A program made the position numbers and the translations under genes. From Mustelus asterias (Eukaryota): a stretch of 64,000 bases of DNA. The notes under the pieces are model-generated. The model saw only the letters and a program-made list of their open reading frames with translations. It had not been told where the DNA came from and ran no database searches. The stretch spans positions 62,001 to 126,000 of the forward strand of contig NW_027590385.1 in NCBI RefSeq assembly GCF_964213995.1. Direction: 5' to 3'. Positions 31,233 to 64,000 of this stretch are shown here, piece by piece (the stretch's first letter is position 1; each line of letters opens with the position of its first letter).

Positions 31233-31803
31233 AACTGCACATAAGCAAGCATTAAAATATAACTCATTTATCTTTCTCCAAAGCAGTTCTGACACCTCCA
31301 GTGAAAGACGAAATTGTTGAAAAAACTCACCGCATCAGCATTTGTGGACTTAAAGCTCCAGCGAAATATCCGCCCAATATTGTTATCTCGACTGTCTGCA
31401 GCTGGGGGCTTTTGTTTATAAAGTACACATGTTACAGTCAATATTTTAACCCAGCGACTTCAACATGTGACAACTCTGAGGCAGCCTTTGATATTTGATC
31501 ACTTTTGAAAGGTGTGGTCTGTCACAGTTAACTGATCTGGAACATTTAAAATACAGATTGATGGCCTTGTTCTCTTGGGAGATCTGCGGGTTTGTGTCAA
31601 TGGGATCGGGAAACGATTGGATTTGATCTGATATTAATATGAGTAAAAATATGTCAAATTTCTCAACATTGACAATGATTAACCTCAGTGAGGGAAAACA
31701 CTCAGACGGGGCCTAATTGTCACGTTCACTATGAGTAATTATTCTCTGAAGTTTAACCCCATGTGTTGTCCTGATAATGAATAATTGATCATCGACCTGT
31801 GCC

Positions 31804-43245: not shown

Positions 43246-43889
43246 ATCTCTCTCTCTAACGACTCGGCCCAGATGTCTCAGAGTTTTAAAACCTCTCTTG
43301 AATCCTCTTTCTACGTTCTACGCTCGAAGAAACAGACCCAGCTGCTTCCATCTATCCACAAAACGGTACTTCTTTATTTCTGGTGTCATTCTCTTGAATC
43401 TTTTCCACCCACGCAGCCATACTTTAACATCCTCCCTGCAGTACAGAGTGCCGAACTAGAACAATGCTCTACTTGAGGCAGAATCAGTTTTTACAGCCGT
43501 GTAAATCACATTTTAACACATTTGTGCACATACATTAAGATAAACTCTTTATACTTTCCTCATTAGCAAGCACAGACGGTTAACATACGAAACAATCATA
43601 TTGGAAAGCAAGTCTCATACCGATATAAATCTAAGCCTCTGATCAACCTAGACAGTTCAGAGCAAACAAAGAAGGTTTTTATTTAGAGTGCAGTCAGTGT
43701 TGCAATGTTAGACATGGGGCAACCATGTTATGCAAAGCGATATCGCAAAAACAGCAATGTGAGACAAGGAGACCAATGTTTTTATCTTTCAAAGCTGTCG
43801 TCTGAGAAACAGCGATTGTCCCCAGGAAACAAAGAGAATGTCACACACTTCCTTATAGCCCTGTTCACAGTACTGGCCCTGTGATCTTT

Positions 43890-44440: not shown

Positions 44441-44478
44441 TTTGTACCTGTCTCACTTCCCAAATCTATCTTGTTGCC

Positions 44479-44969
44479 TTACAATGTTGTCTTAAGTGTC
44501 ACCTCCTCTGCTTCTGCTGAATATGTTACTGCACTTTGACCATCAGGTCCCTGTCCTCTGAGGAGTTGGTAGTCAGCATCTTTTGGTCGTTTCTTCAGGC
44601 TTGTGTATGTTGAATCTTGTACTGGAACCATCTGGGGAGTGTTAGGCTTAGTCTCATCTTGCCTTTGGAGGCTTGCAGCAGGCCCAGCCTCGGCCTGCTC
44701 TCTTATTGAGCCTGAGCTCGGCCCAGACTCGGCCTGAATTCTGAGGCTTGCAGCAGGCCCAGCCTCGGCCTGCTCGCTTAGTGAGCCTGCGCTAGGCCCA
44801 ACCTTATCCAGCCTTCTGAGGCCTGCAGCAGGCCCAGCCTCGACCTCCACTGTCAGTTGCGAAGACCGCTTTGGCCTGCCCTGCACCCGTTGGCCAGTGG
44901 CCTGGGCTTGCTCCTTGGTGTCAGGTTGAGTTCCAGGACTTAGCAAATCAGAGTAAATTCCTTCTTCTC
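44479..44969 (-). CDS. Receptor terminal exon: cytoplasmic tail
   Basis: Acceptor TTCCTCTTTGCAG; EEGIYSDLL..3x EAGPAA(S/G)[29 protein letters not shown]. Confidence 0.8.
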
Positions 44970-47900
44970 CTGCAAAGAGGAAAGATCAATTTCAGTGGAA
45001 AAAGAAACCTAAGAACAAGGAGCAGTTGGATGCAGTGAGCTTGGTTCTCGTCCTGTGGCACGATTATGCTGATCCTATCAACTCTATTCTCCACTCCACT
45101 CCCCGTTCTCTTTTAGAAAATGCCCGAAAATCTCTCAAACTCTGTCTTGAATCTACTCAATGAATGATCATCTACCGCTCTCTGGGTTAGAGAATTTCAA
45201 AGACTTACCACTCTGACTGAAAAGCCTGAAATTTGATCCCTTACCCTGAAACCGTGACCCCCATATTCCAGACTCCGCAACCGGGGGAGACATCCGGTAA
45301 GCATGTTGCACTTGAAACTGTGAGAGATCTGTATACGTTTCAAACAGATCACCTCTTACACTATTTGCTTCCAGAATACTAATCTCATATCAGCCAATAT
45401 CCCTCAGCCCAGGAGTCAGTAGCAAAATGATTTTCTCTGTATCGCTCGAATATGAGTTAATTCGGTAAGGAGACCAAAACTGTTCGCAGTATTCCAGCTG
45501 TGACAGTACCAATGTAGCTCTAACAAGAATACCTCACTCTAGGACACCAAATGCTTGTGTAAAAGAGGCAAACATGGGTTTCGGGCTGATTCCTGTGCCC
45601 GCCTGTTTGACAAATCTCCAGGCAAGGGAGATCGGGAGGCAGATTGACACAGAGACAGTCTGAGCATCTCCAAAATGATAAAATTACACTCAGTAATGTT
45701 TACAAATAAAAAATTCCCTCTTACACTGCCCCACAACCAAACATTCCGAACAGGTACAGCACGAGGTTAGGGACAGAATACATCTCCGTGTACATAGTTC
45801 CCATCAAACACTCCCAGGACAGGTACCGCACAAGGTTAGATACAAAGTAAAACTCCCTCCACACTGTCCTCATCAAACGTTCCCAGAACAGGTAGAGCAC
45901 AGAGTAAGATACAGAATAAAACTTGCTCTACACTGTCTCCATCAAACACTCCCAGGCCAGGTATAGCACAGGGTTAGATACAGTGTGAAGCTCCCTCGAG
46001 ACTGTCCCCATCAAAAACTCCCAGGACAGGTACCGGACGTGGTTACATACAAAGTAAAACTCCCTCTACACCATAAGACCATAAGACCATAAGACATAGG
46101 AGCGGAAGTAAGGCCATTCGGCCCATCGAGTCCACTCCACCATTCAATCATGGTTGATTTCAACTCCATTTACCCGCTCTCTCCCCATAGCCCTTAATTC
46201 CTCGAGAAATCAAGAATTTATCAATTTCTGTCTTGAAGACGCTCAACGTCTCGGCCTCCACAGCCCTCTGTGGCAATGAATTCCACAGACCCACCACTCT
46301 CTGGCTGAAGAAATTTCTCCTCATCTCTGTTCTAAAGTGACTCCCTTTTATTCTAAGGCTGTGCCCCCGCGTCCTAGTCTCCCCTGTTAATGGAAACAAC
46401 TTCCCTACGTCCATCCTATCTAAGCCGTTCATTATCTTGTAAGTTTCTATCAGATCTCCCCTCAACCTCCTAAACTCCAATGAATATAATCCCACGATCC
46501 TCAGACGTTCATCGTATGTCAGGCCTACCATTCCTGGGATCATCCGTGTGAATCTCCGCTGGACCCGCTCCAGTGCCAGTATGTCCTTCCTGAGGTGTGG
46601 GGCACAAAATTGCTCACAGTACTCCAAATGGGGCCTAACCAGTGCTTTATAAAGCCTCAGAAGTACATCCCTGCTTTTGTATTCCAAGCCTCTTGAGATA
46701 AATGACAACATTACATTTGCTTTCTTAATTACGGACTCAACCTGCAAGTTTACCTTTAGAGAATCCTGGACTAGGACTCCCAAGTCCCTTTGCACTTTAG
46801 CATTATGAATTTTGTCACCGTTTAGAAAATAGTCCATGCCTCTATTCTTTTTTCCAAAGTGTACGACCTCGCACTTGCCCACGTTGAATTTCATCAGCCA
46901 CTTCTTGGACCACTCTTCTAAACTGTCTAAATCTTTCTGCAGCCTCCCCACCTCCTCAATACTACCTGCCCCTCCACCTATCTTTGTATCATCGGCAAAC
47001 TTGGCCAGAATGCTCCCAGTCCCGTCATCTAGATCGTTAATATATAAAGAGAACAGCTGTGGCCCCAACACTGAACCCCGCGGGACACCAATTGTCACCG
47101 GTTGCCATTCTGAGAAAGAACCTTTTATCCCAACTCTCTGCCTTCTGTCTGACAGCCAATCGTCAATCCATGTTAGTACCTTGCCTCGAATACCATGGGC
47201 CCTTATTTTACTCAGCAGTCTCCCGTGAGGCACCTTGTCAAAGGCCTTTTGGAAGTCAAGATAGATAACATCCATTGGCTCTCCTTGGTCTAACCTATTT
47301 GTTATCTCTTCAAAGAACTCTAACAGGTTTGTCAGGCACGACCTCCCCTTACTAAATCCATGCTGACTTGTCTTAATCCGACCCTGCACTTCCAAGAATT
47401 TAGAAATCTCATCCTTAACGATGGATTCTAGAATTTTGCCAACAACTGAGGTTAGGCTAATTGGCCTATAATTTTCCATCTTTTTTCTTGTTCCCTTCTT
47501 GAACAGTGGGGTTACAACAGCGATTTTCCAATCCTCTGGGACTTTCCCTGACTCCAGTGACTTTTGAAAGATCATAACTAACGCCTCCACTATTTCTTCA
47601 GCTATCTCCTTTAGAACTCTAGGATGTAGCCCATCTGGGCCCGGAGATTTATCAATTTTCAGACCTTTTAGTTTCTCTAGCACTTTCTCCTTTGTGATGG
47701 CAACCATATTCAACTCTGCCCCCTGACTTTCCTGAATTGTTGGGATATTACTCATGTCTTCTACTGTGAAGACTGACGCAAAGTACTTATTAAGTTCCTC
47801 AGCTATTTCCTTGTCTCCCATCACTAGATTACCAGCGTCATTTTGGAGCGGCCCAATGTCTACTTTTGCCTCCCGTTTGTTTTTAATGTATTTAAAGAAA

Positions 47901-50900
47901 CTTTTACTATCATTCCTAATGTTACTGGCTAGCCTACCTTCATATTTGATCCTCTCCTTCCTTATTTCTCTCTTTGTTATCCTCTGTTTTTATAGCTTTC
48001 CCAATCTTCTGACTTCCCACTACTCTTTGCCACATTATAGGCTCTCTCTTTTGCCTTGATGCATTCCCTGACTTCCTTTGTCAGCCATGGCTGCCTAATC
48101 CCCCCTCTGATAACCTTTCTTTTGTTTGGGATGAACCTCTGCACTGTGTCCTCAATTACTCCCAGAAACTCCTGCCATTGCTGTTCTACTGTCTTTCCCA
48201 TTAGGCTCTGCTTCCAGTCGATTTTTGTCAGTTCCTCCCTCATGCGCCTGTAATTACCTTTATTTAACTGTAGAACCTTCACATCTGATTCTGCCTTCCT
48301 TCTTTCAAATTGCAGACTGAATTCTACCATATTATGATCACTGCTTCCTAAGTGTTCCCTTACTTTAAGATCTTTCATCACACTCTACACTATCCCCATC
48401 AAACACTCCTCGGACAGGTAAAGCACAGAACTCGATACAAAGTAAACCTTCATCGATACTGTCCCCCATCAAACACTTCTAGGACAGGTACAGCTCAGGA
48501 TTAGATACAGAGTACAACTTCCTCCATACTATCCCCCATCAAACATTCCCAGGACAGGTACAGCACGGTGTCAGATACAGAGTAAAACTCCCTCTACACT
48601 GTCCCCCATCAAACACTCCCAGGACAGCTACAGCACGGTGTTAGATACAGAGTAAAGCTCCCTCTGCACTGTCCCCATCAAACACTCCCAGGACAGGTAC
48701 AGCACGGTGTCAGATACAGAGTAAAACTCCCTCTACACTGTCCCCATCAAACACTCCCAGGACAGGTACAGCACGGTGTTAGATACAGAGTAAAGCTCAC
48801 TGTATACTGTCCCCATCAAACACTCCCAGGACAGGTACAGCACGGTGTCAGATACAGAGTAAAACTCCCTCTACACTGTCCCCCATCAAACACTCCCAGG
48901 ACAGCTACAGCACGGTGTTAGATACAGAGTAAAGCTCCCTCTGCACTGTCCCCATCAAACACTCCCAGGACAGGTACAGCACGGGGTTAGATACAGAGTA
49001 AAGCTCCCTCTACACTGTCCCCATCAAACACTCTCAGGATAGGTACAGCACGGTGTTAGATACAGAGTAAAACTCCCTCTACACTGTCCCTCATCAAACA
49101 ATCACCGTTGTACCGGCAGAAAACTGCTGACCTCCTCCTACCCACAGTAATGGACAGCAGTTTGTTAGGCAGAGTCAGACAGTTTTGGCGTACCCGCTGG
49201 ATTGAACCCCTACCTTGGTTTTGTCTCCTTTTCTTTTCATTTTTACCTAGACATAAGAGGCAAAATAAGAGAAAGTCAGTATCAGATGATATTGAGTCTC
49301 TGTTATCACTCCCTCCCTCTCCCCACTCTCTCCCTCTGCTGCCACCCTCCATCCCTCTCCTACTAAAACCCCAGTTCCAGTGCGAGATTCCCTCTTTGCC
49401 GCACAGCACCAGTGCGAGATCTCCTGTCTCTCACAGCCCAGTGTGACATCCCCTGTCCCTCACACCCCCAGTGCGAAATCTCCTGTCTCTCACACCCCCA
49501 GTGTGAGATCCCCTGTCTCTCGCACTCCCAGTGTGAGATCCCCTGTCTCTCATACTCTCGTGCGAGGTCCCCTGTTACTCATACCCCCAGTGCGAGATCC
49601 ACGACCTCTCACACTCAATGTTCGGGAAGCATTCTGGGATTAAGAGGAGATTGTTTGCTGCTATGAGAACAGACCCAACACTTAACTGCTCTGCTGATGG
49701 CACAGATAGAAGGTGATCAGCAAAGCCGCCGTATAAACTGCCAAGAAAATTGCAGTAAGAATAATCTTCACTTTCTGGTACTGAACTGAGGAAACATCTG
49801 TAAATAGAACAATATGGAGAAAGAGAGTCGTTCAATAGCAAATGACAACAGCAGGACATTCTCTCACATGCAGTGTGTGTGCGCTTGTGTGTCTGCGTAC
49901 ATTTGTGTGTGTGCATATGTGTCGCGTGTGCTGCCTTCTTGAAACGCTGCAGTCCTCGTACTGTGGGTTGATCCACAATGCCATCGTGATTGTTAAAATT
50001 GAGTGTCTCGCTGGGTTATTTCTGACAGCAGTTGAGAGTCAACCACATTGCTGTTTTTCGATTCACAGGTGGACCAGTCAGGGTAAGGACTGCAGTTTTT
50101 CTTCCCTAAAGGACAGTAGTGAACCCAACCATTTCCAAAAATGGTTTCATGCCACCAGCAGATTCTTAAATCCAGATTTTTGTTATTGAATACAAATACC
50201 ACTGTCTGTACGCGCGTGTGTGTGTGTCAGTGTGCGTACGCGCGCGTGTGTGTGTGTGTGTGTATGTATGTGTGTGCACATAAGTGTGAGAGTGTCTACA
50301 TGTGTGTGTGTGTACGTGCGTGTGTGTATGTGTGTGCGCATGCCGAGTGTGTGTATGTGTGTGTGTGTTTACATGTGCACATGTGTGTGTGTTTGTGTGT
50401 GCGCGCGCGTGAGTGTGTTTGTGTGTGTGTATAGCACAGGTCTGTGTGTGTGCATGCATATGTGTGTATGAATGAAAAAAAAAATCACACTCCGGATGTT
50501 GTGCCTCCTAGATGGTGGACAGATTGTGGGGAGTTAGGAAGCGAGTTAATTGACACAAGACTGCTTCATAGTGTCTGAGCAGTATCCTTCCTTATATCAT
50601 GACGCAGAATATATTACAGTGACAGTGGTAGAATTGATCATCAACCCGCAGGTTAGGGGGGGATTCAGTGTTGGTAACGTCACTGAATGGCAAGGATTTG
50701 TCCATGCATTTGAGATGTAGTAAAATGATAGGTTGTTACCTGGTAGAATTTTGATAGTGTTGCTGTAGCCACAAGTTTCTCCCAAATCAACAGTCTGCTC
50801 GACTCCTGCTGCAGCTTCCTTGCATTTATAAACCGTCTCTCCAAGCTGGGAATCGAGGGTGACATCCAAAATCATCCCACCAAACTGCAGCTCATGCCTC

Positions 50901-53900
50901 TGATCACTGATAACCTTTTTGTTCCCTCTGAACCACTCAACAGCCGAGCCACGCAAGCTGGAACACATCAGTTCCACTTTGCATGTCCCACTGCTGGGCT
51001 GCTTTCTCTCGAGGCAAATCTGCAGCTCCCCAGCAGTACCTAGTGTGAAAAAGAGATTCGTAACTCGAGCAGCTGGCTGCAAGCAAAGATCTATTTTTAT
51101 TCTCTCACAAGATTTGGGTGTCGCAGGCTGGAACAGCATTTATTGACCATCCCTAATTGGTCTTGAGAAGGTGGTGGTGAGCTGCCTTCTTGAACCGCGT
51201 CAGTCCCCGTGATGTAGGTATACCCACAGTGCTGCTCGAGAGGGTGTTTCAGGATTTTGACACAGCGACAGTGAAGGAACAGTGATATATTTCCAAGTCA
51301 GGATGCTGAGTGACTTGGAGGGGAACCTCCAGGTGGTGGTCTTTCTGTTACTCTTCTAGATGGTAGAGGTCGTGCAATTGAAGGGTGCTGTCGAAGGAAT
51401 CTCAGTGAGTTCCTGCAGTGCATCGCGTAGAGGCTACTCATGGCTGCCACTGTGCGTCAGTGGTGGAAGGAGTGAATGTTTTTGGAAGGGCTGCTTTATC
51501 TTTGGCCGTGTAGAGCCTCATGGGTGTTGATGGAGCTGCACTTACCAAGGCAAGAGCAGACTATTCCATCATACTCCTGACTTGTGCCTGATGGTGGGTC
51601 TGTCTTCACAAAGGAAGACATGAATAATGTACCAAAAGCTCTGAGAGAAACAAGTTTTAATGAAGTGCTGAAGGAAATCAGTATTAATAGGGAAATGGTT
51701 TGGGGGAAAATAATGGGATTGAACAAAGAACAAAGAAAATTACAACACAGGAACAGGCCCTTCGGCCGTCCAAGCCTGCATCGACCATGCTGCCCGACTG
51801 AACTAAAGCCCCCTATCCTTCTGGGAACCTTATCGCTGTATTCCCATCTTATTCATGTATTTGGCAAGATGCCCCTTAAAAGTCACTGTCGTATCTGCTT
51901 CCACTACCTTCCCCAGCAGCGAGTTCCAGGCACCCACCACCCTCTGTGCAAAACACGTGCCTCATACATCGCCTTTCAACCTTGCCCCTCGCAACTTAAA
52001 CCTATGCCCCCTAGTAATTGACTCTTCTACTGTGGGAAAATAGCGTCTGACTATCCATTCTGCCCCCTTCATGATCTTGTAGAGGTTGATCAGTTCGCCC
52101 GCTCAACATTTGTCGTTCCAGCTCGAACAAACTAAGTTTCTCCAACCTCTGCTCACAGCTAATGTCCTGCATACCAGGCAACATCCTGGTTAAAGGGTGG
52201 CAGGTAAGAAGATAGGATAGGATAGGATAGGATAAAGACAGCAAAGAATGACAAAAAGATTAATAAAGAGGGAGAATGAGAGAAAGTTATCGAGGAAAAT
52301 GAGAAATTGAAATATAGTATATAATGTAACAATTTCCACAGATACTTCAAAAAGAAAAGTCAACAAAGTGAGCATTGGTCCTATGGAAAGTATGTCTGGG
52401 GAGTTGAAAACAAAACAATAAGGAGATAGGAGATGAACTGAACCAGTATTTTAAATAAAGGTTGGTGGCACGGTGGTTAGCATTGCTGCCTCATAGCGCC
52501 AGGGACTCGGGTTCAATTTTGGCTTCGGGTAACTGTCTGTTTGGAGTTTGCACGTTCTCCCCATGTCTGCATGGGTTTTCTCCGGGTGTTCCGTTTCCTC
52601 CCACAGTCCAAATATGTGCGGGTTATGTTGATTGGCAATGGTAAATTGACACTCTGGTCAGGGGAATTAGCAAGGTTAATATGAAGTATGAGGGGAATAG
52701 GGTCTGGGTGGGATTGTGGTCGGTGGCAGACTTGATGCTCTCAATGGCTTCCTTCTGCACTGCAGGCATTCTATTCTATGAAATTTCTTCTGCACCCTCT
52801 CCAAAACCTGCACATCCTTCTGGTAGCGTGAAGACCAGAATTGAACACGATATTCCATGTGCAGCCTAACTAAGGTTCTATAAAAATGCAACATGACTTG
52901 ACAATTTTTAAACTCAATGCCCCGGCCGATGAAGGCAAGCATGCTGTATGCATTCTTGACTACTTTATATAAAACTACAGCACAAAAGAGGCCGTTCGGC
53001 CCCACAAGTTGTGCCGAACATATCCCTACCTTCTCGGCCGACCTATAACACTCCATCCTATTACGTCCCATGTACTCATCCAGGAGTCTCGTAAAAGACC
53101 CTATTGAGTTTGCCTCCACCAACACTGACGGCAGCCGATTTCACTCGTCCACCACCCTCTCTGTGAAAAAGTTCACCCTCACAGTTCCCCTGTACCTAAC
53201 CCCCAGCACCTTAAACCTGTGTCCTCTCGTAGCAGCCATTTCCACCCTGAGAAAAAGCCTCTGAGAGTCCACTCGATCTATGCTTCTCAACATCTTATAC
53301 ACCTCTATTAGGTCTCCTCTCATCCTACGTCTCTCCAAGGAGAAAAGACCGAGCTCCCTCAGCCTATCCTCATAAGCCATGCCACTCAATCACTGACCAA
53401 CATCCTTCTAAATCTCCTCTGCACCCTTTCAATCTTTTCCACATCTTTCCTATAATGAGGCGACCAGAACTAAGCACAGTACTCCAAGTGGGGTCTGACG
53501 AGGGTCTTATATAGCTGGATCATTATCCCCCGACTCCTAAACCCAATCCCTCGATTGATAAAGGCCAGCACACCATACGCCTTCTTAACCACCTCCTCCA
53601 CCTCCGGGGCCGATTTTAGAGTCCTATGGACCCGGACCCCAAGGTCCTTCTGATCCTCTACAGTACTAAGAGTCTTTCCCTTTATATTGTACTCCTTCAT
53701 CCCATTTGACCTGCCAAAATGGACCACTACGCATTTATCTGGGTTGAAGTCCATCTGCCACTTCTCCACCCAGTCTTGCATCCTATCTATGTCCCTCTGT
53801 AACTTCTGACATCCCTCCAGACTATCTACAACCCCACCAAACTTTGGGTCGTCGACAAACTTACCAACCCATCCCTCCACGTCCTCATCCAGGTCATTTA

Positions 53901-56900
53901 TGAAAATGACAAACAGCAAGGGTCCCAGAACAGATCCCTGGGGCACACCACTGGTGACCGACCTCCATTTAGAAAAAGACCCATCTGTACCCACTCTCTG
54001 CCTCCTCTGGGCAAGCCGTTCTGGATCCACAGGGCAGCAGCCCCTTGGATACCATGCCCTCTCACTTTTTCTAGAACCCTTGCATAGGGGACCTTATCGA
54101 ACGCCTTGCTAAGATCCATATAAACCACATCTACCGCTTTCCCTTCGTCAATGTGTTTAGTCACATTTTCGAAGAACTCCACCAGGCTCGTAAGGCACGA
54201 TCTGCCTTTGACAAAGCCATGCTGAGTATGCTTGAGCATACTAAACCTCTCTAAATGCTCATAAATCTTGTCCCACAGGATTTTCTCCATCAGCTTACCA
54301 ACCACTGAGGTTAGACTCACCAGTCGGTAATTTCCTGGGTTATCCTTATTCCCCTTCTTGAAAATAGTAACCACATCCGCAATCCTCCAATCCTCCGGCA
54401 CCTCTCCCGTCTCCATCGACCTTCTCCACCTGCGTTGCCACTTTCAGTGACTTGGATATCTGCACACCCAGATCCCTCTGCCTGTCAATATTCTTAAGGG
54501 TTCTGCCATTTACTGTATATTTCCCATCTATATTAGACTCCCAAAATGCATTACCTCACATTTGTCCATTAAACTCCAGCTGCCATCTCTCCGCCCAAGT
54601 CTCGAACCATTCTATATCCTGCTGTATCCTCTGACAGTCGTCACTGCGATCCACAATTCCTCCAATCTTTGCATCATCTGCAGACTTACTAATCAAACCA
54701 GTTACATTTACCTCCAAATCATTGATATATATTACAAGCATCAAAAGTCCCAGCATTGATCCCTGAAGAACGCCACTTGTCACAGCCCTCCATTCAGAAA
54801 CGCACCCTTCCACTACTACCCTCTGTCTTCTATGACCGAGGCAGTTCTGCAACCATCTTGCCAGCTGATCTCTGACCCCGTGCGACTTAACCTTCTGTAC
54901 CAGTCTGCCATGAGGGACCTTGTCAAAGGCCTTACTGAAGTCCATGTAGACAACATGCACTGCCCTACCCTCATCAATCATCGTCGCCACTTCCTCGAAA
55001 AACTCGATTAACTAAGTGAGACACGACCTCCCCATCACAAAACCATGTTGTGTCTCACTAATACGTCCACTTATTTTCAAGTGGGAGTAAATCCTGTCTC
55101 GAAGAATGCTCTCCAATAATTTCCCCACCATTGGCTGAAGGCTCACCGGCCTTTAATTACCTGGTTTATCCTTACTACCCTTCGTAAACAAAGGAACAAC
55201 GTTATCCAATCTTCTGGGACCTCCACTGTACTAGTGAGGATACAAAGATTTCTCTCAAGTCCTGAGCAGTTTCCTCCCTTGCATCTCTCAGTATTCTGGG
55301 GTGTTTCCCATCGGGCCCCGTGGACTCGTCTAATTTAGTGCTTCTCAAGAACCCAATATTGCCTCCTTTTTGGTCTCATCATGACGCAAACTATCTACAC
55401 ACACTTCCCCAGACTCGTCATTAAGCAAGTCCTCCTCTTTTGTGAAAACTGACGCAAAGTATTCATTTAATACCGCGCTCATTTCCTCTTTTCCTCCAGC
55501 TCCACGCATAGATCCCCTCCCCTGTCCTCCTCCAGGTCCCTTGCTTTCTCTTCATATATGCATTAAAAGGATTTTCCTTAATCCTGCTGGCCAATTACTT
55601 TATGTGACCCCTTTTAGCCCTCCTTACTCCTTGCTTGAGCTTCTTTCTACTTTTCTTGTATTCCACTTCTCCTTCGTGTGTTCCCATTCTCCTAGCCTTG
55701 ACAAATGCTTCCTTTTTCTCCAGCCAAAAGAGAAAATGCTGGAAAATCTCAGCAGGTCTGGCCGCATCTGTAAGGAGAGAAAAGAGCTGACGTTTCGACT
55801 CCAGATGACCCTTTGTCAAAGCCAAAAGACATAGAAAGTCAGAGATATTTATAGTGCAGGGTGAGGAAATGAAAGGTGAGTCATCGCCACAGGAACCATG
55901 AGCTTCCTTTTTTTCTCTTTGACTAGGCTCACAATATCTCTCACTATCCAAGTTTGCTGAAACTTGCCATAATTACCCTTCAGACTTATAGGAATGTGCC
56001 AGTCCTGAATTCCTACCAACTTGCAGTTGAAAACCTCCCACATGTCAGAAATTGATTTGCCCTCAAATATCTGCCCCAATCTATATTCTTCAATTGCTGC
56101 CAAATAATGTTGTAATTCGCCTTCCCCTAATTTAGCACCTTCACTTGAGGACTACACTTATCTTTATCCATCAGTACCTGAAAGCTTACTGAATTGTGGT
56201 CACTGTTCCCAAACTGCTCTCCTCCTGAAACGTCGTCACCCGGCCAGGCTCATTCCCCAATACCAGGTCCAGTACGGCTCCTTCCCGAGTTGGGCTATCG
56301 ACATAATAGTTCAAGTCATCCTCCTGGATGTGCCTTACAAACTCTGCCCCATCCACATCGCGAGCACTAAGTAGTCCCAGTCATTTTGGGGAAATTAATA
56401 TCTCCCTCCACAGCAACCCTGTTACTTTTGCACCTTGCCAAAATCCGCCTATATATCTGTTCCTCTGTCGCTGGCTTTTGGGGGGACTACAGTAAACCCC
56501 CAGCGTTGTGACTACACCCTTCCTGTTCCTGAGCTCTTCCCATGTTGCCTCGCTGTATGAGCTCTCTGAGGTGTCCTCCCACAATACATTTGTGATATTC
56601 TCCAGTAGTGTAACTCCCCCACCCCTTTTAGATCCCCCTCTATCCCACTGAAAACATCTGTATCCTGGAACGGAAAGCTGCCAATCCTGTCCTTCCCTTA
56701 ACCAAGTCTATAGTGGCAACAACATCATAATTCCAAGTATTAATCCAAGCCCTAAGTCCTTACCTGTTACACTTCCCGCATTGAAACAAATGTACATCAG
56801 TCCACCAGAACCTCTTTGATGAGCAACCACACTCTGCCTGCTCTTTCTCTGAATTTTACTGGACCTACTCTCCAGTCCTCCTTAAGTGGGCGGCATGGTG

Positions 56901-59900
56901 GCACAGTGGTTTGCACCGCTGCTTCCCAGCGTGATGGACCAGGGTTCGATTGCCTTCTTGGGTTACTGTCTGTGTTACACTCTTTCTAAAATGGTCTCTG
57001 GGGCCTTATAATCTTCATGTCAGAGTACATAACGGAACAGCCCTAGAGGGGGGTGGCACGGTGGCACAGTGGTCAGCACTGTTGCCTCAAAGCTCGAGCT
57101 TTAATTCCAGCCACGATCACTGTCTGTTTAGAGTTTGCACGTCCTCCCCATGTCTGCGTGGGTTCCTTCAGGGTGTTCCGGTTTCCTCCCACAGTCTGAA
57201 AGACGTGCTGGTTAGGTGCATTGATCCGAACAAGTGCCAAGTGCGGTGACTAGGGGAATTTCACCGTCACTTAATTGCAGTGTTAATGCAAGCCTTATTT
57301 ATGACTAATAAATGAACTTTTACTTTAAGTTAATTCACCTTTGCTTTGGTTCCTATCCCCTGCCAAAGTACTTTAAATCCTCCCGTGTGATACTAGCAAA
57401 CCTCCCGGTCAGAATATTAATGCCCCTCCAGTTTAGATACAAGCCGTCCTTGTACAGATCCCACCTGTCCCGTAAGAGATCCCAGTGGTCCAGATATCTA
57501 AACCCTGCCCCGTACACCAGTTGTTGAGCCACATGTTGAGCTGTACTACCTTCCAATTTCTAGCCTCATTGGTACATAGCGCAGGTAATAATCCTGAGAT
57601 TACAATCCTAGAGGTCCTGCTTTTTAACATTCTATCTAACTCCCTAAACTGCTGCAGGATCTCATCACTCTTTCTAAAATGGTCACTGGGGCCTTATAAT
57701 CTTCATGTCAGAGTACATAACGGAACAGCCCTAGAGGGGGGTGGCACGGTGACACAGTGGTCAGCACTGTTGCCTCAAAGCTCGAGCTTTAATTCCAGCC
57801 TCGATCACTGTCTGTTTAGAGTTTACACGTTCTCCCCTTGTCTGCGTGGGTCTCCTCCGGGTGCCCCGGTTTCCTCCCACAGTCAAAAGTTACAGAGTTA
57901 AAGGTTCTAACAGAGCAGAAGGAGGCCATTCAGCCCATCAAGTCTGCAAGGAACGCAATCCCACCCAGGCTCTATCCCCGTAACCCCATGTATTTAACCA
58001 AGCTAGTCCCTCTGACACTATGGGGCAATTTAGCATGGCCAATCCACCTAACCCACACATGCTTGGAATGTGGGAGGAAACCGGAGCACCTGGAGGAAAT
58101 CCACGCAGACACGGGGAGAACGTGCAGACTCCGCACAGACAGTGACCCAAGCCAGGAATCGAACCCAGATCCCTGGCGATGTGAGGCAGCTGTGCTAACC
58201 ACTGTGCCACCGTGCCGCGTGCAGATTAGGTTGATTGGCCATACCAAATTGACCCGAGTGTCAGTGGATTGGCAGGGTAAATATGTGGGGTCATGGGAAT
58301 AGGGTCTGGGTGGCATTGTGGTCGGTGCAAACTCGATCGGCCAAACGGCTTCCTTCAGAACTGTATGAATTCTGTGATTCTATGAAATAGGGACACCTTT
58401 GGTGTCATTTTCCAGTTCTTTGGACTCTGGACTGGTTCCTGCAGATTGGAGGGTAGATAATGTAAGCCCGCGATTCAGAAAATGGGGTAGTGAGAACAGG
58501 GTACTATGGACCAATGAGCCTGACATCAGTATTGGCGAAGGAGCTGGAGTCCGTTTATCAAGTATTTCAAAACTCAGCAGTTGGAAAACAGTGGTATAAT
58601 CAGGCAATGCCAGCATCTATTTACAAAGGAGAAATCATGCTTGATGAATCTATTGGAATTATTTGAGAATGTAACTAGTAGAGGAGAACTAGAGAAGGTG
58701 GTTTATTTGGACTTTCAGAAGGCTTTTAACAAGTTAGTGTCTTGAGATAGATAGAAAGCTGGTTAGCAGGCCGGAAACAGAGTTCGCATAAATGGGTCTT
58801 TTTTCGATTGGCAAGCAGTGAAGTGACTCGTGGACGACTGCAGGGATCGGTGTTGGGATCCCAACTGTTCACATAAAAGATTGATGATTCGGAAGAGGGA
58901 ACGAAATGTATTAGCTCCAAGTTTGCAGATGACAAATTATGGTGGGAGGGTGAGCTGTGAGGAGGATGCAGGGATTCTTTAACCTGATTTGGACAGGCTG
59001 AATGAGAATGAGTGCGCATACGCATGGCAGATGCAGTATAACGTGGACAAATGTGAGATTATCCACTTTGGTGGCAATAATAGGAAGACAGATTATTGTT
59101 TGAATGGTTGTAAACTGAGAGAGGTGGATTCTCACCGAGACCTTGGTGCCCTCGTGCATCAGTTGCCGAAAGTAAACACTGAGGCACTTAGCAGGCAGTA
59201 AAGAAGGCAAATAGTATGTTGGACTTCATAGCGAGAGATAAGAGTGTCGGAATAGGGATGTTTTATTGCAATTGTGTCGGGTGTTGGTGAGGCCACACTT
59301 GGAGTACTGTGTGCAGTTTTGGTGTCCGTATCTGAGGAAGGGTGTCCTTGCTATAGGAGGCAAGCACCAAAGGGTTACCAGGCTCATTCCTGGAGTGGCA
59401 GGTCCGTCATGTGAGGAGAGACTAAATCAGTTACGCTTATATTCACTGGGGTTTAGAAGAGTGAGAGGGGATCTCATAGGAATTATTAAATGGCGGGGGA
59501 GTCCAGAATTAGGTGTCGTACTTTGAGGATAAGGGATGAACTGATTAAGACTGAGGTGATTAAAAATGTCTTCACCCAGAGAGTGGTGAATCTGTGGAAT
59601 TCAATGTGACAGCAAGGAGTTAAGGCCAAAACGTTGTGTGATTTCAAGTTATTAGATATAGCTCAAGGGATCAAGGGATATGCGGGGGGTGGGGGGGGGG
59701 GAGGTGGTGGGGGGATGGTTGAGGGAGGGGGTGATCAGTTTCTGAGTATCTGACTGAGAAGATGAGTGGTTATGCTGTAGCAATGAGAGGCAAACATAAG
59801 AAATATTTCTAAAATCAACAAATGAGACGCCATCAAATCTGAATTTCAAATTGAGACTGAGGGTTTTTAAAGTCTTAATCAAAGGGATTTCAGGAAAAGG

Positions 59901-62569
59901 TGAGCAGATGATGTTTGATCCCAAAGTAGACAAGATCATGTTGAAAAGCTCAACAGTTTTGTACTGCCTGTCCTCAACTGCCTCACACTCAGACCCTTCC
60001 TCACACTCACACACACCCCTCTCACCCTCCTTCATACACCCTCTACTATATAAGCACCCTCCATCACAAGCTCACCACCTCCCCCTCACATTATCTCCCT
60101 CACACCCCCCCCACCCCTTTCCCTCACCCCCTTTCCCTCACCCCTTCTCCCTCACCCCCTCTCCTTATGCACCCTCACTTATACCGTCACCCGCCCTCAC
60201 AATCACACCCACCTTCGCACCCTGTCCTGCTTATACCTTCTCCTTCCCTCACATCCTTTCCTTCACACTCGCTTCCTCATGTGTATTCTCCTTCATACTC
60301 ACCCCCTCTGCCACACTCTCCCCTTCCCTCTCCCTCACACACTCTCCCTCACACTCACCGTTCCTCTCGCTCAGTCACATTCACTCACGCTGGTGCTCAC
60401 TCACAACTCACACCTTTTCCCTCTCATACCTTCTCCCACCCTCTCACCCTTTCCTGCACACTCGCCCTCCTCCGCACTTACGCCATCCCACGCCCTCATC
60501 CCCTCTCCCCCACACTCACCCTCTTCCCGCACTCTCGCCCCCTGCCCTCACACGCCCTCACCCCCTTCCTCATCCTACCACTCCGCACTCTTGAGTCATA
60601 GAAACCCTACAGTGCAGAAGGAGGCCATTCGGCCCATCGAGTCTGCACCGACCACAATCCCACCCAGGCTCTACCCCCACATATTTACCCGCTAATCCCT
60701 CTAACTACACATCTCAGGGACAATTTTTAACCTGGCCAATCAACCTAACCCACACATCTTTGGACTGTGGGAGGAAACCGGAGCACCCGGAGGAAACCCA
60801 CGCAGACACGAGGAGAATGTGCAAACTCCACACAGACAGTGACCCGAGCCGGGAATCGAACCCGGGACCCTGGAGCTGTGAAGCAGCAGTGCTAACCACT
60901 GTGCTACCGTGCTGCCCAAGTCATAGAGCTTTATAGCATGGAAACAGGCCCTTCTGCCCAACTAGTCCCTGCCACCCTTTTTTTTAACCACTAAGCTAGT
61001 CCCAATTACCTGCATTTGGCCCATATCCCTGTCGACCCATCTTACCCATGTAGCTGTCTGAACGCTTTTTAAAAGACAAAATTGTACCCGTCTCTATTAC
61101 TATCTTTGGCAGCTTGTTCCAGACACTCACCACCCTCTGTGAAAAACTTGCCCCTCTCGACAAATTTGTATCTCTCCCCTCTCACCTTAAACCTATGCCC
61201 TCTAGTTTTCCCCTACCTCTGGGAAAATATGTTGATTAGCTAACTGATCTATGGCCCTCATTATCTTATAGACCTCTATTCTCACCCCTAGGTCCTCCTA
61301 AGTCTCCTGCTCTCCAGGGAAAAATGTCCCAGCCTATCCAGCCTCTCCTTATAACTCAAACCATTAAGTCCTGGTAACATCCTAATAAATTATTTCTACA
61401 TTCTTTCTAGTTTAATAATCTCCTTTATGAAATAGGATGACCAGAACTGTACACAGTATTCCAAGTATGGCCTTGCCAATGTTTTGTACAAATTCAACAA
61501 GACGTCCCAACTACTGTATTCATTGGTCTAACCGAGGGAACCAAGCATGCCGAATGCCTTCTTCACCACTCTGTCCTCCCCCTCCTCTCCACTCACCCCC
61601 TCCCCCGCACTCTCACCGTCCATCACAGGTACCCTCCATCACAGGCACCCTCCATCATAGACACTCTCCATCATAGTCACTCTCCATCTCAGTAACCCTC
61701 TCTCACACGCCCCTTCCTCACGCATCCTCTGCCACTCCCTCTCTCTCAGGCCCTAATTCAATTGATGTGGTTCACTCCATCTTATCACTTTCTCACCTCA
61801 CATCCTCCCCTCACTCTCTCACCTTTGCTGAATCTCTCTGTGACTCCCTCCCTCTCAATGCCTCTTTCTCACTCATCCTCTCTCACTCCCTTCCTCCTAC
61901 TCCCTCTCCTCACTCACACCCCTTCCCAATTTCTTCCTTTCCTCCCTCACCACTGTCTCCCTCATTCACCCCTCCATCACTCAAAACTCCCTTCCTTACT
62001 ACTCACTCTATAACTCACTCACCACTTCTTCCCTGTCCTCCCTCACTCTACCCCTCACCCCTTCACCACTCCCTCCCTCCATCACTCTTTCCCTCCCTCA
62101 CTCACAACTCCCTTCTTCACTCACAATTCCCTCCCTCACTCACTCACCACTCCCTCCCTCACTCACTCACCAGTCCCTCCGTCAATCTTTCCCTCACTCA
62201 CTCCATTCCCTCTATGTATAACTCACTCACCAATCCCTCCGTCACTCTTTCCCTCCCTCACTCACCACTCCCTCCCTCACTCACCACTCCACAGTGACAG
62301 CAGGATCATGGTTCCCCACAGATTTCCATACACTGGATCCATTGGTTGATTCCTGCGGATTGGAAGGTGCAGAGAGATGGTGGACGAACGAGGCTGAGAG
62401 AATCTTCAGAAACTGCTGACGAATTGAATCCGTTCAGTGCAAGAATTGAAGGGTTTGGTCCAGAAACTTGCGATAGCATCTGAGACTTGGTCACTTCCTG
62501 AGAAAAGGTGTCAGCTGATAACATCCACAAAACCAAAATAGACGCCAGAGCACAAAATTCTTCTCGGAA
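44479..62569 (-). CDS. SLAM/CD2-like Ig-superfamily type I receptor with ITAM-bearing tail (5 exons; ATG exon not found)
   Basis: join(62569-62332, 51039-50740, 49797-49687, 49246-49214, 44969-44479). All junctions are GT-AG and phase-1 compatible, giving about 390 aa without stops. Confidence 0.75.
45730..49100. repeat. ~69-70-bp minisatellite interrupted by a CR1 insertion
   Basis: Unit CCATCAAACACTCCCAGGACAGGTACAGCACGGTGTTAGATACAGAGTAAAGCTCCCTCTACACTGTCC at 45730-46071 and 48383-49100. Confidence 0.9.
46072..48382 (-). mobile_element. CR1-type LINE, 5'-truncated
   Basis: ORF 47824-46160 with RT motifs; (CCATAAGA)n tail; flanked by CTCTACAC on both sides (probable TSD). Confidence 0.92.
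49214..49246 (-). CDS. Receptor juxtamembrane mini-exon
   Basis: Polypyrimidine tract and TAG acceptor, 33 nt (S)[10 protein letters not shown](G), donor AAG|GTAGGG. Confidence 0.7.
49375..49615. repeat. ~30-bp tandem repeat
   Basis: About 8 units of CAGTG(T/C)GAGATCCCCTGTCTCTCACACCCC. Confidence 0.85.
49687..49797 (-). CDS. Receptor transmembrane exon
   Basis: Acceptor TTCTATTTACAG; [37 protein letters not shown]; donor CA|GTTAAG (weak). Confidence 0.8.
50205..50470. repeat. Imperfect (TG)n microsatellite
   Basis: Directly visible. Confidence 0.95.
50740..51039 (-). CDS. Receptor Ig C2-set exon (SLAM/CD2-like)
   Basis: 300-nt phase 1-1 exon: [79 protein letters not shown], with the C-x5-C..W..YxC..C pattern. 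Confidence 0.85.
51590..59690. mobile_element. Nest of degenerate CR1 LINEs and HE1-type SINEs within the receptor intron
   Basis: Minus-strand CR1 pieces 51722-57660 (RT, APE, SGNH-type ORF1) with a second CR1 nested at ~52975-54418. SINEs at ~52460-52780, 56890-57310 and 57740-58380. Plus-strand CR1 at 58385-59680. Confidence 0.85.
59990..62290. repeat. C/T-rich low-complexity tracts with an embedded HE1-type SINE (60595-60916) and CR1 3' fragment (60920-61575)
   Basis: Directly visible; the SINE has intact A/B-box-like head on the minus strand. Confidence 0.85.
62332..62569 (-). CDS. Putative receptor exon: signal peptide + Ser/Pro-rich N-terminal segment
   Basis: Island of unique sequence between low-complexity tracts. 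CAG acceptor after a pyrimidine tract; [32 protein letters not shown]; donor T|GTATGG in phase with the C2 exon. Confidence 0.55.
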
Positions 62570-62579: not shown

Positions 62580-64000
62580 CAAAGAGAGAGAGAGAGAAAC
62601 AGAGTTAAAGCAACAACAGAAAGGGAAAGGGAGAAGGAGTAACAGAAAGAGGAACACAAAGGGAAACAGACAGGAGAGATGAAAAAGCAGCGACAAAGAT
62701 TGAGAAACAGAAATAGAGATAGAAAGAAACAAAATGGCAGAGAAACTCGTCGAGAGAAACAAATTAATACAGAAAGGCAAGCAGAGAGACGTGGGCAGAC
62801 AGAAGCAGAGGCCAAAAGAGAGAGACAGCTACAGAGAGAGAGAGAGAGACAAACAGGGAAACAGACGTGGGGGCCAGCAAAGGGAGAAAGAAACAGAGAG
62901 AGAGGGAGAAAGAAACAGAGATAGATAGAGAAAAACACACAAACACAGAGAAACAGAGAGAAAGGCAGAAAGAGAGAGAGAGAAAGAGAGAGGGAGAGCA
63001 ACGGAGACAGATAGAAGGAAACTGAGAGAGAGTGAAACAGCGGAAGAGAGAGAGGCAGGGAGAAAGAGACAGAGAGAGAGCGATGCAGGGAGAGGGGGGG
63101 GGGACGCAGGGAGAGAGAGAGAGGCAGAGAGAGAGAGAGACAGAGGGAGTGAAGCGGGGGTGGGGGGGGGGGTGAGAGGATAGAGAGAGAAGCAGGGAGA
63201 GAGAGAGAGCAAGGCAGGGAGAGAGAGAGACAGGCAGGTAGAGAGTGAGAGAGAGGGAGAGGCAGGTAGAGAGAGAGGGAAAGGCAGGGAGAGACAGATA
63301 GAGAGGCAGGGTGAGAGGGAGAAGCAGGCAGAGAGAGAGAGAGAGGCAGGGAGAGAGAGGAAGAGAGGCAGAGAGAGGGAGAGAGAGAGGCAGGTAGAGA
63401 GACAGAAAGGCAGGGAGAGAGGCAGGGAGAGAGGCAGGGGGAGAGAGAGGCGGGAAGTGAGATAGAGAGAGAGGCAGGGAGAACGAGAGAGGCAGGGAAA
63501 GAGAGAGAGAGAGTGGGACAGGGAGAGCGAGAGAGGGGGGCAGCGAGAGAGGGGGGCAGCGAGGGAGAGAGACAGGGAGAGAGAGGGGGGAGCAGGGAGG
63601 GAGAGAGAGAGACGGAAAGAGGCGGGGAGAGAGAAAAGCAGGGATAGCGAGAGAGGCAGGGAGTGAGAGAAAGACAAGGAGAGAGACAGAGGGAGACAGA
63701 TAGAGAGAGAGACAGGGAGAGGGAAAGAGAGGCAGGGAGAGAGAGAGAGAGAGGCAGGCAGAGAGAGAGAGAGGCAGGCAGAAAGAGAGAGGGGGAGGGT
63801 GAGAGAGGGAGGGGGTCAGGGAGAGAGAGAGAGAGAGAGGGAGAAGCAGGGAGAGAGAGAGAGAGAGAGAGAGGCAGGGAGAGAGAGAGGCGGGGAGACA
63901 GGGAAAGGCAGGGAGAGAGAGAGAGAGAAAGAAAGAGAGGCAGGGAGAGAGGGAGAGACAGAGGAAAGAGATAAGCAGGGAAAGAGAGAAGGAGAGAGGG
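62580..64000. repeat. (GA)-rich low-complexity tract
   Basis: Directly visible. Confidence 0.95.

What the first reader, a model, noticed from the sequence alone, without database searches (positions are those of the whole stretch)
44479..62569. Hidden SLAM/CD2-like receptor with its own ITAM, next to the TCR alpha/delta V array
Seen: five small minus-strand exons scattered through 18 kb of repeats splice in frame (62569-62332, 51039-50740, 49797-49687, 49246-49214, 44969-44479). They encode a signal peptide, a ~60-aa Ser/Pro-rich segment, one Ig domain, a 22-aa uncharged TM, a basic stop-transfer segment and a ~175-aa tail. Established: the C-x5-C..W..YxC..C pattern is that of the membrane-proximal C2 domain of SLAM/CD2-family proteins, which normally carry an N-terminal V domain and signal via ITSMs or Pro-rich motifs, not ITAMs. 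Inference: this may be a self-signalling lymphocyte receptor ending about 12 kb from the last V pseudogene. I recognise no orthologue, but cannot exclude that it is already annotated.
Basis: partly seen in the sequence, partly recalled or inferred. Interest (0 to 1): 0.9.

Follow-up and report, generated by a model that had tools for sequence, protein, structure and literature searches.

The report
Shark single-Ig receptor with own ITAM
A real shark gene beside T-cell-receptor V segments, already catalogued but unstudied, encodes a small one-domain surface receptor whose own tail carries an activation motif; the mucin-like front end proposed for it was a misreading.

Summary
The true first coding exon runs from ATG 62342 to 62285 (GTGAGT donor) and encodes a ~20-residue signal peptide. 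The gene is intact and matches, exon by exon, RefSeq model LOC144486687 of Mustelus asterias ("uncharacterized protein"): 319 aa without the 33-nt exon 4, 330 aa with it. Its family was found only in elasmobranchs (10 species; 7 loci in M. asterias), all unnamed. The product has one C2/I-type Ig domain with four paired-pattern cysteines plus a fifth, an uncharged TM, and a ~175-aa tail. The tail carries IYSDL, 25-aa repeats, a YxxL-x8-YxxL ITAM (kept in 8 of 9 species) and a conserved VTYSA..EEV end. There is no V domain and no ITSM, so it fails the SLAM/CD2 membership tests, although its nearest outside relative is a skate CD2/SLAM/CEACAM-like protein. Eight V-like segments lie at 1.5-32 kb, three of them with 23-bp-spacer RSS. 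First-stage notes report the same kind of gene on other pieces of this genome. No paper on the family was found.

The parts
62343..62569 (-). 5' untranslated part of exon 1 (transcript start not determined).
   Evidence: In the frame of the ATG it has two stops. It is homologous to the N-terminal extension of the Scyliorhinus torazame model P0031 (tblastn 45% over 104 aa). No RNA data could be laid.
62285..62342 (-). Exon 1 coding part: ATG plus signal peptide [19 protein letters not shown](G). Donor GTGAGT, exit phase 1.
   Evidence: Exact match to residues 1-19 of P0028 and P0029. Conserved MDPVYGN.. start in S. canicula and S. torazame.
50740..51039 (-). Exon 2: the single Ig domain (C2/I type), phase 1/1. 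Cysteines fall at family positions 28, 39, 45, 92 and 109.
   Evidence: exact match to P0028 21-119. AlphaFold2 gives mean pLDDT 81.4 with seven strands. Fold matches are to I-set/C2 Ig domains.
49687..49797 (-). Exon 3: stalk plus transmembrane helix (TM about 49765-49700, [22 protein letters not shown], no charged residue), phase 1/1.
49214..49246 (-). Exon 4: 33-nt cassette encoding the basic juxtamembrane segment (S)[10 protein letters not shown](G), phase 1/1. It is absent from RefSeq isoform X2 (P0028) and present in paralogues P0029 and P0030.
44479..44969 (-). Exon 5 coding part: 163 codons of cytoplasmic tail plus the TAA stop.
   Evidence: exact match to P0028 158-319.
44944..44955 (-). 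Membrane-proximal YSDL in EEGIYSDL.
   Evidence: Kept as IYSDL in all shark models and as IYSHV in Mobula and Hypanus. Absent in Narcine.
44668..44846 (-). Coding tandem repeat, 75-nt (25-aa) units, 2.4 copies ([21 protein letters not shown]). Copy number differs between paralogues and species.
44560..44607 (-). ITAM: [16 protein letters not shown] (YxxL-x8-YxxL).
   Evidence: Arises in 351 of 200000 shuffles of the exon-5 translation. Kept in 8 of 9 species whose tail was examined.
44500..44529 (-). Conserved C-terminal motif [10 protein letters not shown].
   Evidence: It reads VTFSA..EEV in Mobula and Hypanus.
43678..43683 (-). First AATAAA downstream of the stop: a candidate poly(A) signal, not verified. 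A second lies at 43378.

Best explanation
The minus-strand gene whose coding region spans 62342-44479 is an intact copy of Mustelus asterias LOC144486687. It belongs to an unnamed family seen here only in sharks and rays. It encodes a small type I membrane protein with these parts: a cleaved signal peptide, one ~90-residue C2/I-type Ig domain, a short stalk, an uncharged transmembrane helix, and a ~165-175-residue tail that is probably disordered. By their pattern the Ig-domain cysteines would form two disulfides, and a fifth ectodomain cysteine is left over that could link two chains. Proposed mechanism (inferred): the receptor is clustered by a still unknown ligand, or is constitutively dimerised. 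Src-family kinases then phosphorylate the two tyrosines of the tail ITAM (YTSL-x8-YQLL). A tandem-SH2 kinase of the Syk/ZAP-70 type docks there and the cell is activated, with no need for a DAP12/FcR-gamma-type adaptor because the TM has no charge. The conserved IYSDL near the membrane and the VTYSA..EEV end are probably further docking or sorting sites. Skipping the 33-nt basic exon 4 changes the juxtamembrane segment. Shown here: gene structure, identity with the RefSeq model, domain order, cysteine pattern, motif conservation and the neighbouring V segments. Inferred: expression, disulfides, dimerisation, ligand binding, phosphorylation and the direction of signalling.
For: Gene model: canonical splice sites and consistent phases. 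Every exon translation is an exact substring of a public protein. tblastn finds exactly five pieces and no second copy in the window.
Family: an exhaustive HMMER search with the exon-2 domain gave 23 hits at E<=0.001. Six are single-Ig proteins of sharks and rays, with E from 1.8e-32 to 4.6e-9. All are named 'uncharacterized'.
Architecture: orthologues go straight from signal peptide to this Ig domain.
ITAM: the regex is met and arises in only 0.18% of shuffles. It is kept in 13 of 19 models, plus P0037. Pfam ITAM PF02189 matches 2 of 10 members, best E 1.8e-5, and is precomputed for P0007.
TM: no charged residue.
Cysteines: five ectodomain cysteines in the Mustelus, Scyliorhinus, Mobula and Narcine models.
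Against: There is no expression evidence. The window's own tail does not reach Pfam's ITAM model even at E<=10. Heterodontus has D in place of the second ITAM tyrosine. Three of seven M. asterias models stop before the ITAM. In Mustelus and Scyliorhinus the first ITAM tyrosine also fits the ITIM pattern S-x-Y-x-x-L, so the sign of signalling is open. Stegostoma and Rhincodon lack the canonical B-F cysteine pair. No ligand is known. In CD2/SLAM/CEACAM proteins the ligand-binding domain is the V domain (recalled), which this protein lacks.
Confidence: 0.7

Rival explanations
1. It is a signalling subunit rather than a ligand-binding receptor. Like CD79a/b or CD3 chains, a small Ig domain plus ITAM would pair, through the spare ectodomain cysteine, with a like chain or with another recognition chain, and would only transmit the signal.
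Against: The TM has no acidic or basic residue for assembly. Ig_4 scores 16.6 bits against a cut-off of 30.1. No CD3 or CD79 chain appears in the PDB sequence searches at E<=10. The tail is about three times longer than those of CD3/CD79 (recalled). The ITAM lies within one exon rather than being split by an intron as in CD3/CD79/FcR-gamma genes (for this gene; the split is recalled).
Confidence: 0.2
2. It signals mainly as an inhibitor or a switch. The first ITAM tyrosine (S-T-Y-T-S-L) would work as an ITIM recruiting SHP-type phosphatases, or the ITAM would work in its inhibitory mode.
For: STYTSL fits S/I/V/L-x-Y-x-x-I/V/L in the Mustelus and Scyliorhinus models. The first-stage note s1-891473 raised the same point.
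Against: The residue at -2 is P in Heterodontus, Stegostoma, Narcine and Hypanus and at the first ITAM of Mobula, so the ITIM fit is not conserved, whereas the double YxxL/I spacing is. No ITSM is present in any of 14 tails.
Confidence: 0.1
3. One reading: a SLAM/CD2-family member whose V domain is replaced by a ~60-aa Ser/Pro-rich (mucin-like) segment, with an undiscovered upstream ATG exon.
For: The cysteine pattern C-x5-C..W..YxC..C is present. The nearest non-family hit, P0006 (E 3.4e-10; 29% identity to each of its two C2 domains), matches CEA, CD48/CD2, SLAMF6 and CD2 chains. The protein-atlas leads are SLAMF7 and SLAM-like clusters at 0.92-0.93.
Against: The Ser/Pro segment is a wrong-frame reading of the 5'UTR, and the ATG is at 62342. 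All orthologues go from signal peptide straight to the Ig domain. There is no ITSM or Pro-rich tail. No CD2/SLAM chain appears in direct PDB sequence searches. Descent from a CD2/SLAM/CEACAM-like ancestor by loss of the V exon remains possible (my estimate about 0.35) and is compatible with the best explanation.
Confidence: 0.03
4. This copy is a silent or decaying duplicate among seven near-identical loci, or a haplotig or assembly duplicate on a small scaffold.
For: There are seven M. asterias loci, several on small contigs of 248-941 kb. Three models lack the ITAM end. No RNA evidence was obtained.
Against: The window copy has no stop or frameshift in 993 coding nt, all splice sites are intact, and it equals a RefSeq model.
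Confidence: 0.1

Closest known systems
SLAM/CD2 family (CD2, CD48, SLAMF1-9)
   Same: The membrane-proximal C2-type Ig domain has the four-cysteine pattern C-x5-C..YxC..C (that this marks CD2/SLAM C2 domains is recalled). There is a weak sequence link through the skate protein P0006. The NTB-A C2 domain is among the tied best fold matches.
   Different: There is no V domain and no ITSM or Pro-rich tail, but there is an ITAM instead. The whole tail sits in one exon. The gene lies beside TCR-type V segments.
ITAM-bearing CEACAMs (CEACAM3, 19, 20)
   Different: CEACAMs have an N-terminal V-like domain. No direct sequence match was found. CEACAM3/19/20 are mammalian genes (recalled).
CD79a/CD79b and CD3 gamma/delta/epsilon
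   Same: One small Ig domain, a TM and an ITAM. An extracellular cysteine is available for dimerisation.
   Different: The TM is uncharged, the tail is long and repeat-bearing, the ITAM is not split by an intron, and Pfam Ig_4 scores below its cut-off.
NFAM1 (recalled: single-Ig, ITAM-bearing receptor of mammals)
   Same: The overall layout of one Ig domain, a TM and its own ITAM (recalled).
   Different: Not tested, because no NFAM1 sequence was available from the tools. NCBI names all family members 'uncharacterized' rather than NFAM1.
Teleost NILTs (novel immunoglobulin-like transcripts)
   Same: A lineage-specific, clustered multigene IgSF family with an ITAM or ITIM in the receptor's own tail (abstract of PMC3022915 in the listing).
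   Different: NILT domains are V-type, whereas this one is C2/I-type. No sequence link was seen.

Membership tests
SLAM/CD2 family | Ectodomain made of an N-terminal V-set domain followed by a C2-set domain | tested here: not met
   The window has only five coding pieces and none is V-like. Orthologues run from signal peptide directly into the single Ig domain.
SLAM/CD2 family | C2 domain with two disulfides (C-x5/6-C ... YxC ... C). The feature itself is recalled. | tested here: met
   The pattern is present in the window and in most members. The outer pair (positions 39/109) is invariant. The canonical pair is lost in Stegostoma and Rhincodon. Disulfide bonding itself was not shown.
SLAM/CD2 family | Tail with ITSM (TxYxxV/I) or, for CD2, Pro-rich motifs | tested here: not met
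   0 of 14 models have TxYxx[VI] in the tail. The single regex hit, in P0032, lies inside the TM.
SLAM/CD2 family | Significant sequence similarity to named members | tested here: inconclusive
SLAM/CD2 family | Location in the SLAM/CD2 gene cluster | not testable with these tools
ITAM-bearing immunoreceptors (a kind, not a sequence family) | YxxL/I-x6-8-YxxL/I in the cytoplasmic tail | tested here: met
   [16 protein letters not shown]. Arises in 351 of 200000 shuffles. Kept in 8 of 9 species with a tail.
ITAM-bearing immunoreceptors (a kind, not a sequence family) | Match to Pfam ITAM PF02189 | tested here: inconclusive
   The window's exon 5 gives no match at E<=10. 2 of 10 family members match, best E 1.8e-5. 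The match is precomputed for P0007.
ITAM-bearing immunoreceptors (a kind, not a sequence family) | Tyrosine phosphorylation and Syk/ZAP-70 recruitment | not testable with these tools
   Needs experiments.
CD3/CD79 signalling subunits | Charged or strongly polar TM residue for assembly with a receptor. The feature itself is recalled. | tested here: not met
   The [24 protein letters not shown] has no D/E/K/R.
CD3/CD79 signalling subunits | Ig domain matching Pfam Ig_4 (CD3) above its cut-off | tested here: not met
   16.6 bits against a cut-off of 30.1 for the window domain. 3 of 10 members match, best E 0.079.
Unnamed elasmobranch family (M. asterias LOC144486687, S. canicula LOC119971552 and others) | Signal peptide, single Ig domain with the WFRG/GG/VYKC/TCG motifs, uncharged TM, IYSDL, ITAM and VTYSA..EEV tail | tested here: met
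   Exon translations are identical to P0028, and the alignment of 10 members shows the motifs.
NFAM1 | Sequence similarity to NFAM1 | not tested
   No NFAM1 sequence was returned by any tool. The paper search 'NFAM1' + 'shark' gave 8 unrelated papers (listing only).

The most novel reading that the evidence does not exclude
The family is a passenger of the TCR alpha/delta V arrays. Its seven M. asterias loci would have been copied together with V-segment cassettes, so that an ITAM receptor gene sits repeatedly inside a rearranging antigen-receptor locus. It might then share that locus's chromatin opening and be expressed in the T lineage as a lineage-specific, self-signalling co-receptor. The window shows one such pairing: eight V-like segments, three with 23-RSS, 12-43 kb from the gene. 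Unchecked first-stage notes report the same pairing on at least three other pieces of this genome.
Probability: 0.15. Interest if true: 0.7.

Novelty: new variant of a known kind. Interest (0 to 1): 0.45.

Why it matters
Cartilaginous fish are the oldest living lineage with Ig/TCR-based immunity, and few of their non-rearranging signalling receptors have been studied. This gene adds a conserved receptor family shared by sharks and rays that signals through its own ITAM. Its ectodomain is reduced to a single CD2/SLAM/CEACAM-like C2 domain, and the family is expanded in Mustelus and lies beside TCR V segments. It offers a concrete candidate for studying how ITAM signalling was attached to IgSF ectodomains outside the classical CD3/CD79/FcR-gamma adaptors. 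It also bears on whether non-TCR immune genes travel with V arrays. For annotation, the practical gains are a corrected first exon, and evidence that the long N-terminus of the S. torazame model is probably a 5'UTR read-through.

Tried and rejected
RNA evidence. The look-up of sequencing runs on 44250-45000 listed 5 runs from 2 studies.

Direct sequence links to solved structures. The domain alone gave only obscurin, titin, myomesin and zinc-finger rows at E 0.15-4. The family profile gave low-complexity matches of the tail to protein A, plus myomesin and VEGFR2 Ig domains. I treat these as uninformative.

Foldseek against the PDB gave only generic Ig domains, with TM about 0.4-0.56.

Pfam gave no family above cut-off for any exon.

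Protein atlas. SLAMF7, allergin-1, CEACAM20 and FCRL clusters scored 0.92-0.93 for P0024. For the domain alone only generic Ig clusters and CEACAM-like clusters appeared, at 0.90-0.91. These are leads only.

V-domain exon in intron 1. Minus-strand ORFs there are retroelement fragments, and tblastn with family proteins found nothing extra.

C1-type (TCR/Ig constant-like) domain. Rejected: the best fold matches are I-set/C2 domains.

Literature. Seven searches found no paper on this family, and 'LOC119971552' gave 0 papers. I saw only the listings (titles and starts of abstracts), except PMC4079198, where I read six passages. I did not ask for supplements. Gene tables of shark genome or transcriptome papers may list these LOC ids, and I could not see them.

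Full report
WHAT IS IN THE SEQUENCE. I read the five proposed exons on the minus strand and translated each in its own phase. Each has an AG acceptor preceded by a pyrimidine-rich tract and a GT donor. The three internal exons are 300, 111 and 33 nt long and all enter and leave in phase 1. They encode an Ig-like domain, a stalk plus an uncharged transmembrane helix, a basic ten-residue segment, and a 163-codon tail ending in TAA.

THE FIRST EXON IS WRONG. Homologues returned by the searches begin MDPVYGN(L/V)[10 protein letters not shown] and run directly into the Ig domain. That sequence is encoded at 62342-62285, starting with ATG and followed by GTGAGT. Its 58 nt leave in phase 1, and the split codon with exon 2 gives the G found in the public protein. 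In the true frame that upstream stretch carries two stops, so it is 5'UTR. It is conserved as DNA: the Scyliorhinus torazame model P0031 carries a 107-residue N-terminal extension that aligns to it (tblastn 45% over 104 residues). That extension is most simply an over-extended ORF in that model. The "signal peptide", the "~60-aa Ser/Pro-rich segment" and the "missing ATG exon" therefore fall away. With exon 4 the coding sequence is 993 nt (330 aa); without it, 960 nt (319 aa).

IDENTITY. Each exon translation is an exact substring of a public protein. Exons 1, 2, 3 and 5 sit at residues 1, 21, 121 and 158 of P0028. P0028 is [quoted passage not shown], 319 aa, on a 387-kb contig. Exon 4 sits at residue 158 of the paralogues P0029 and P0030. 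So the window is from the starry smooth-hound, and the gene is already a RefSeq model without a name or function. Local tblastn with family proteins finds the five pieces and nothing more in the window. I never joined the exons into one sequence; searches were made exon by exon or with public proteins by id.

FAMILY AND SPREAD. The exhaustive HMMER search of 1.84 billion representatives with the exon-2 domain gave 23 proteins at E<=0.001. Six are single-Ig proteins of elasmobranchs, with E from 1.8e-32 to 4.6e-9. The other 17 are multi-Ig proteins.
- Cluster look-up and three word-indexed searches added members.
- There are seven loci in M. asterias: LOC144486687, 144480780, 144486041, 144485142, 144487169, 144481071 and 144480759. 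Three of them lie on one 20.4-Mb contig.
- The other species are Scyliorhinus canicula (LOC119971552), S. torazame, Heterodontus francisci, Stegostoma tigrinum, Rhincodon typus (a fragment), Mobula birostris, M. hypostoma, Hypanus sabinus and Narcine bancroftii.
- That makes ten species covering sharks and rays, and every entry is "uncharacterized".
- Nothing from chimaeras or bony vertebrates reached the thresholds. The word-indexed searches are limited in sensitivity and length range, and the exhaustive one used a single domain, so absence elsewhere is not proven.

THE PROTEIN. After a ~20-residue signal peptide comes one domain of about 90 residues. AlphaFold2 with the 11-row alignment gives mean pLDDT 81.4, pTM 0.76 and seven strands. 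The B-F cysteines are 47 residues apart, which fits C2/I-type rather than V-type.
- Foldseek finds only generic I-set/C2 domains such as NCAM2, titin and obscurin, best E 5e-4.
- In the family alignment the invariant columns include C39, W55, Y90 and C109.
- The outer cysteine pair (39/109) is invariant. The canonical pair (45/92) is replaced in Stegostoma and Rhincodon.
- Mustelus, Scyliorhinus, Mobula and Narcine models have five ectodomain cysteines. The odd one sits near the N-terminus in those sharks and near the membrane in the rays, which suggests but does not show a disulfide-linked dimer.
- The TM has no charged residue.

THE TAIL. Four tyrosines are conserved: EEGIYSDL next to the membrane, the pair in YTSL-x8-YQLL, and [10 protein letters not shown] near the end.
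- The ITAM pattern YxxL/I-x6-8-YxxL/I occurs in 13 of the 19 models examined, and in P0037.
- The six without it are three M. asterias models that end earlier (P0033-35), the two Heterodontus models (second Y replaced by D) and the Rhincodon fragment.
- By species with a tail examined, that is 8 of 9. Mobula and Hypanus carry two such motifs.
- In the window's exon-5 translation the pattern arises in 351 of 200000 shuffles.
- Pfam's ITAM model does not match the window's tail at E<=10. It matches 2 of 10 family members, best E 1.8e-5, and is precomputed for P0007.
- The first ITAM tyrosine also fits an ITIM pattern in Mustelus and Scyliorhinus, as first-stage note s1-891473 says. The residue at -2 is not kept in the other species.
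- No tail has an ITSM: 0 of 14.
- Between IYSDL and the ITAM lie 25-residue repeats (75-nt period, 2.4 copies, 86% matches). Their number differs among paralogues and species.

SLAM/CD2 OR NOT.
- The nearest protein outside the family is P0006, a skate V-C2-C2 protein named "HEPACAM family member 2-like". It scores E 3.4e-10 in the library search and is 29% identical to each of its two C2 domains, with the C-x5-C and YKC cysteines aligned.
- P0006 in turn matches CEA (7.8e-15), a CD48/CD2 chimera, SLAMF6 and CD2 chains.
- This supports a distant link to the CD2/SLAM/CEACAM group of C2 domains.
- Direct searches do not find those families, there is no V domain, and the tail has neither an ITSM nor Pro-rich motifs.
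- I therefore do not file it as a SLAM/CD2 member. Descent from such a gene by loss of the V exon is possible (my estimate about 0.35).
- CD3/CD79 membership also fails: uncharged TM, Ig_4 below cut-off, a long tail, and an ITAM inside one exon.
- NFAM1 could not be tested.

SURROUNDINGS. Local tblastn with three intact V ORFs of the window finds eight V-like segments: 1567-1939 (+), 2375-2846 (+), 10504-10938 (-), 15672-16001 (+), 19209-19559 (+), 25304-25789 (+), 27199-27675 (-) and 31800-32191 (-). The first and last are split between frames.
- Three have a CACAGTG heptamer. Two of those have a 23-base spacer and an ACAAAAACC-like nonamer; for the third (15.7 kb) the nonamer looks offset by about one base.
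- For the 10.5-kb segment, the best PDB matches that are not engineered antibody constructs are a TCR delta V3 chain (9.8e-18), entry 1tvd "T cell receptor" (1.5e-17) and a TCR alpha-containing scFv (3.6e-17).
- Antibody constructs score higher, so "TCR alpha/delta-type" is likely rather than proven.
- The gene's stop lies 12.3 kb from the last V-like segment. What lies beyond 64000 is unknown.
- Unchecked first-stage notes on other pieces of this genome describe the same kind of gene, three of them next to TCR V segments or relics (s1-894039, s1-894056, s1-894165, s1-891860, s1-891568). That fits the seven RefSeq loci, but I could not verify it.

WHAT COULD NOT BE DONE. No listed sequencing run is on record as RNA. 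Expression, the junctions and the exon-4 alternative therefore rest on splice signals, phases, conservation and the existence of RefSeq models, not on reads that I saw.

HOW IT MOST LIKELY WORKS. It is a type I receptor, possibly a disulfide-linked dimer, that signals by itself. The TM has no charge to recruit an adaptor, and the tail holds a conserved ITAM, which in known systems is phosphorylated by Src-family kinases and binds Syk/ZAP-70 (established knowledge, recalled). IYSDL and VTYSA..EEV are probably further docking or sorting sites. Exon 4 adds or removes a basic juxtamembrane stretch. I give 0.7 to this package; the gene identity is near certain and the signalling part is about 0.6. 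The rivals are a CD79/CD3-like signalling subunit of a larger receptor (0.2), mainly inhibitory use of the tyrosines (0.1), and a silent duplicate (0.1).

NOVELTY. The model is in RefSeq, so the gene is not hidden. No name, Pfam family or paper attaches to it, in seven literature searches (listings only, plus passages of PMC4079198). Self-signalling IgSF receptors with an ITAM are a known kind; examples are CEACAM3/19/20, NFAM1, FcgammaRIIA (the last two recalled) and teleost NILTs. This is a lineage-specific variant whose ectodomain is reduced to one C2 domain, expanded in Mustelus and lying beside TCR V segments. Interest is moderate.

Noticed in passing
window 1567-32191: Eight V-like gene segments in mixed orientation. 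Three have long open ORFs (10534-10938 -, 25304-25789 +, 27199-27675 -). Three carry a CACAGTG heptamer, two with a clean 23-bp spacer and nonamer (10.5 kb, 27.2 kb). Two are split between frames (1.6 kb, 32 kb) and are probably pseudogenes.
   Followed up: partly
window 46160-48381 (minus strand, intron 4) and 52676-56356 (minus strand, intron 1): Retroelement remains lie in the introns. One is a 554-aa reverse-transcriptase ORF (46160-47824) with an upstream 134-aa ORF. Intron 1 holds several broken RT and endonuclease-like ORFs. I did not classify them.
   Followed up: no
window 48383-49100, 45710-46071, 44003-44427: There are 69-70-bp satellite-like tandem arrays: 10.3, 5.2 and 6.2 copies. 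Two lie in intron 4. One lies just downstream of the stop codon, inside the probable 3'UTR.
   Followed up: no
window 62884-63998 and 60071-62290: Long GA/CT-rich low-complexity tracts flank the first exon on both sides. They give long spurious Ser/Leu/Pro ORFs and probably helped to mislead the reading of exon 1.
   Followed up: partly
P0031 (Scyliorhinus torazame model, 434 aa), residues 1-107: The N-terminal extension before MDPVYGN aligns to the window's 5'UTR, which has stops in Mustelus. The extension is probably a read-through of the 5'UTR in that annotation.
   Followed up: partly
P0033, P0034, P0035 (M. asterias LOC144487169, LOC144481071, LOC144480759): Three paralogue models end inside the repeat region, before the ITAM. 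Two from different contigs share the same ending (..AESGLVQAQ). They could be ITAM-less partners, decaying copies or cut models.
   Followed up: no
P0026/P0004 (Stegostoma) and P0003 (Rhincodon): The canonical B-F cysteine pair of the Ig domain is replaced (S and G) in both orectolobiform species, while the outer cysteine pair is kept.
   Followed up: no
P0008 against P0036 (Narcine bancroftii isoforms): Isoform X2 lacks the transmembrane segment that X1 has, which may indicate a soluble form made by exon skipping.
   Followed up: no
runs X2-X5: Four runs of one study hold 63-72% of the sampled words of 44250-45000, although two of them are very small (68 and 185 million letters). That would be unusual for shotgun DNA of a large genome, so they may be RNA or targeted data. 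Their kind is not on record and I could not lay them.
   Followed up: no
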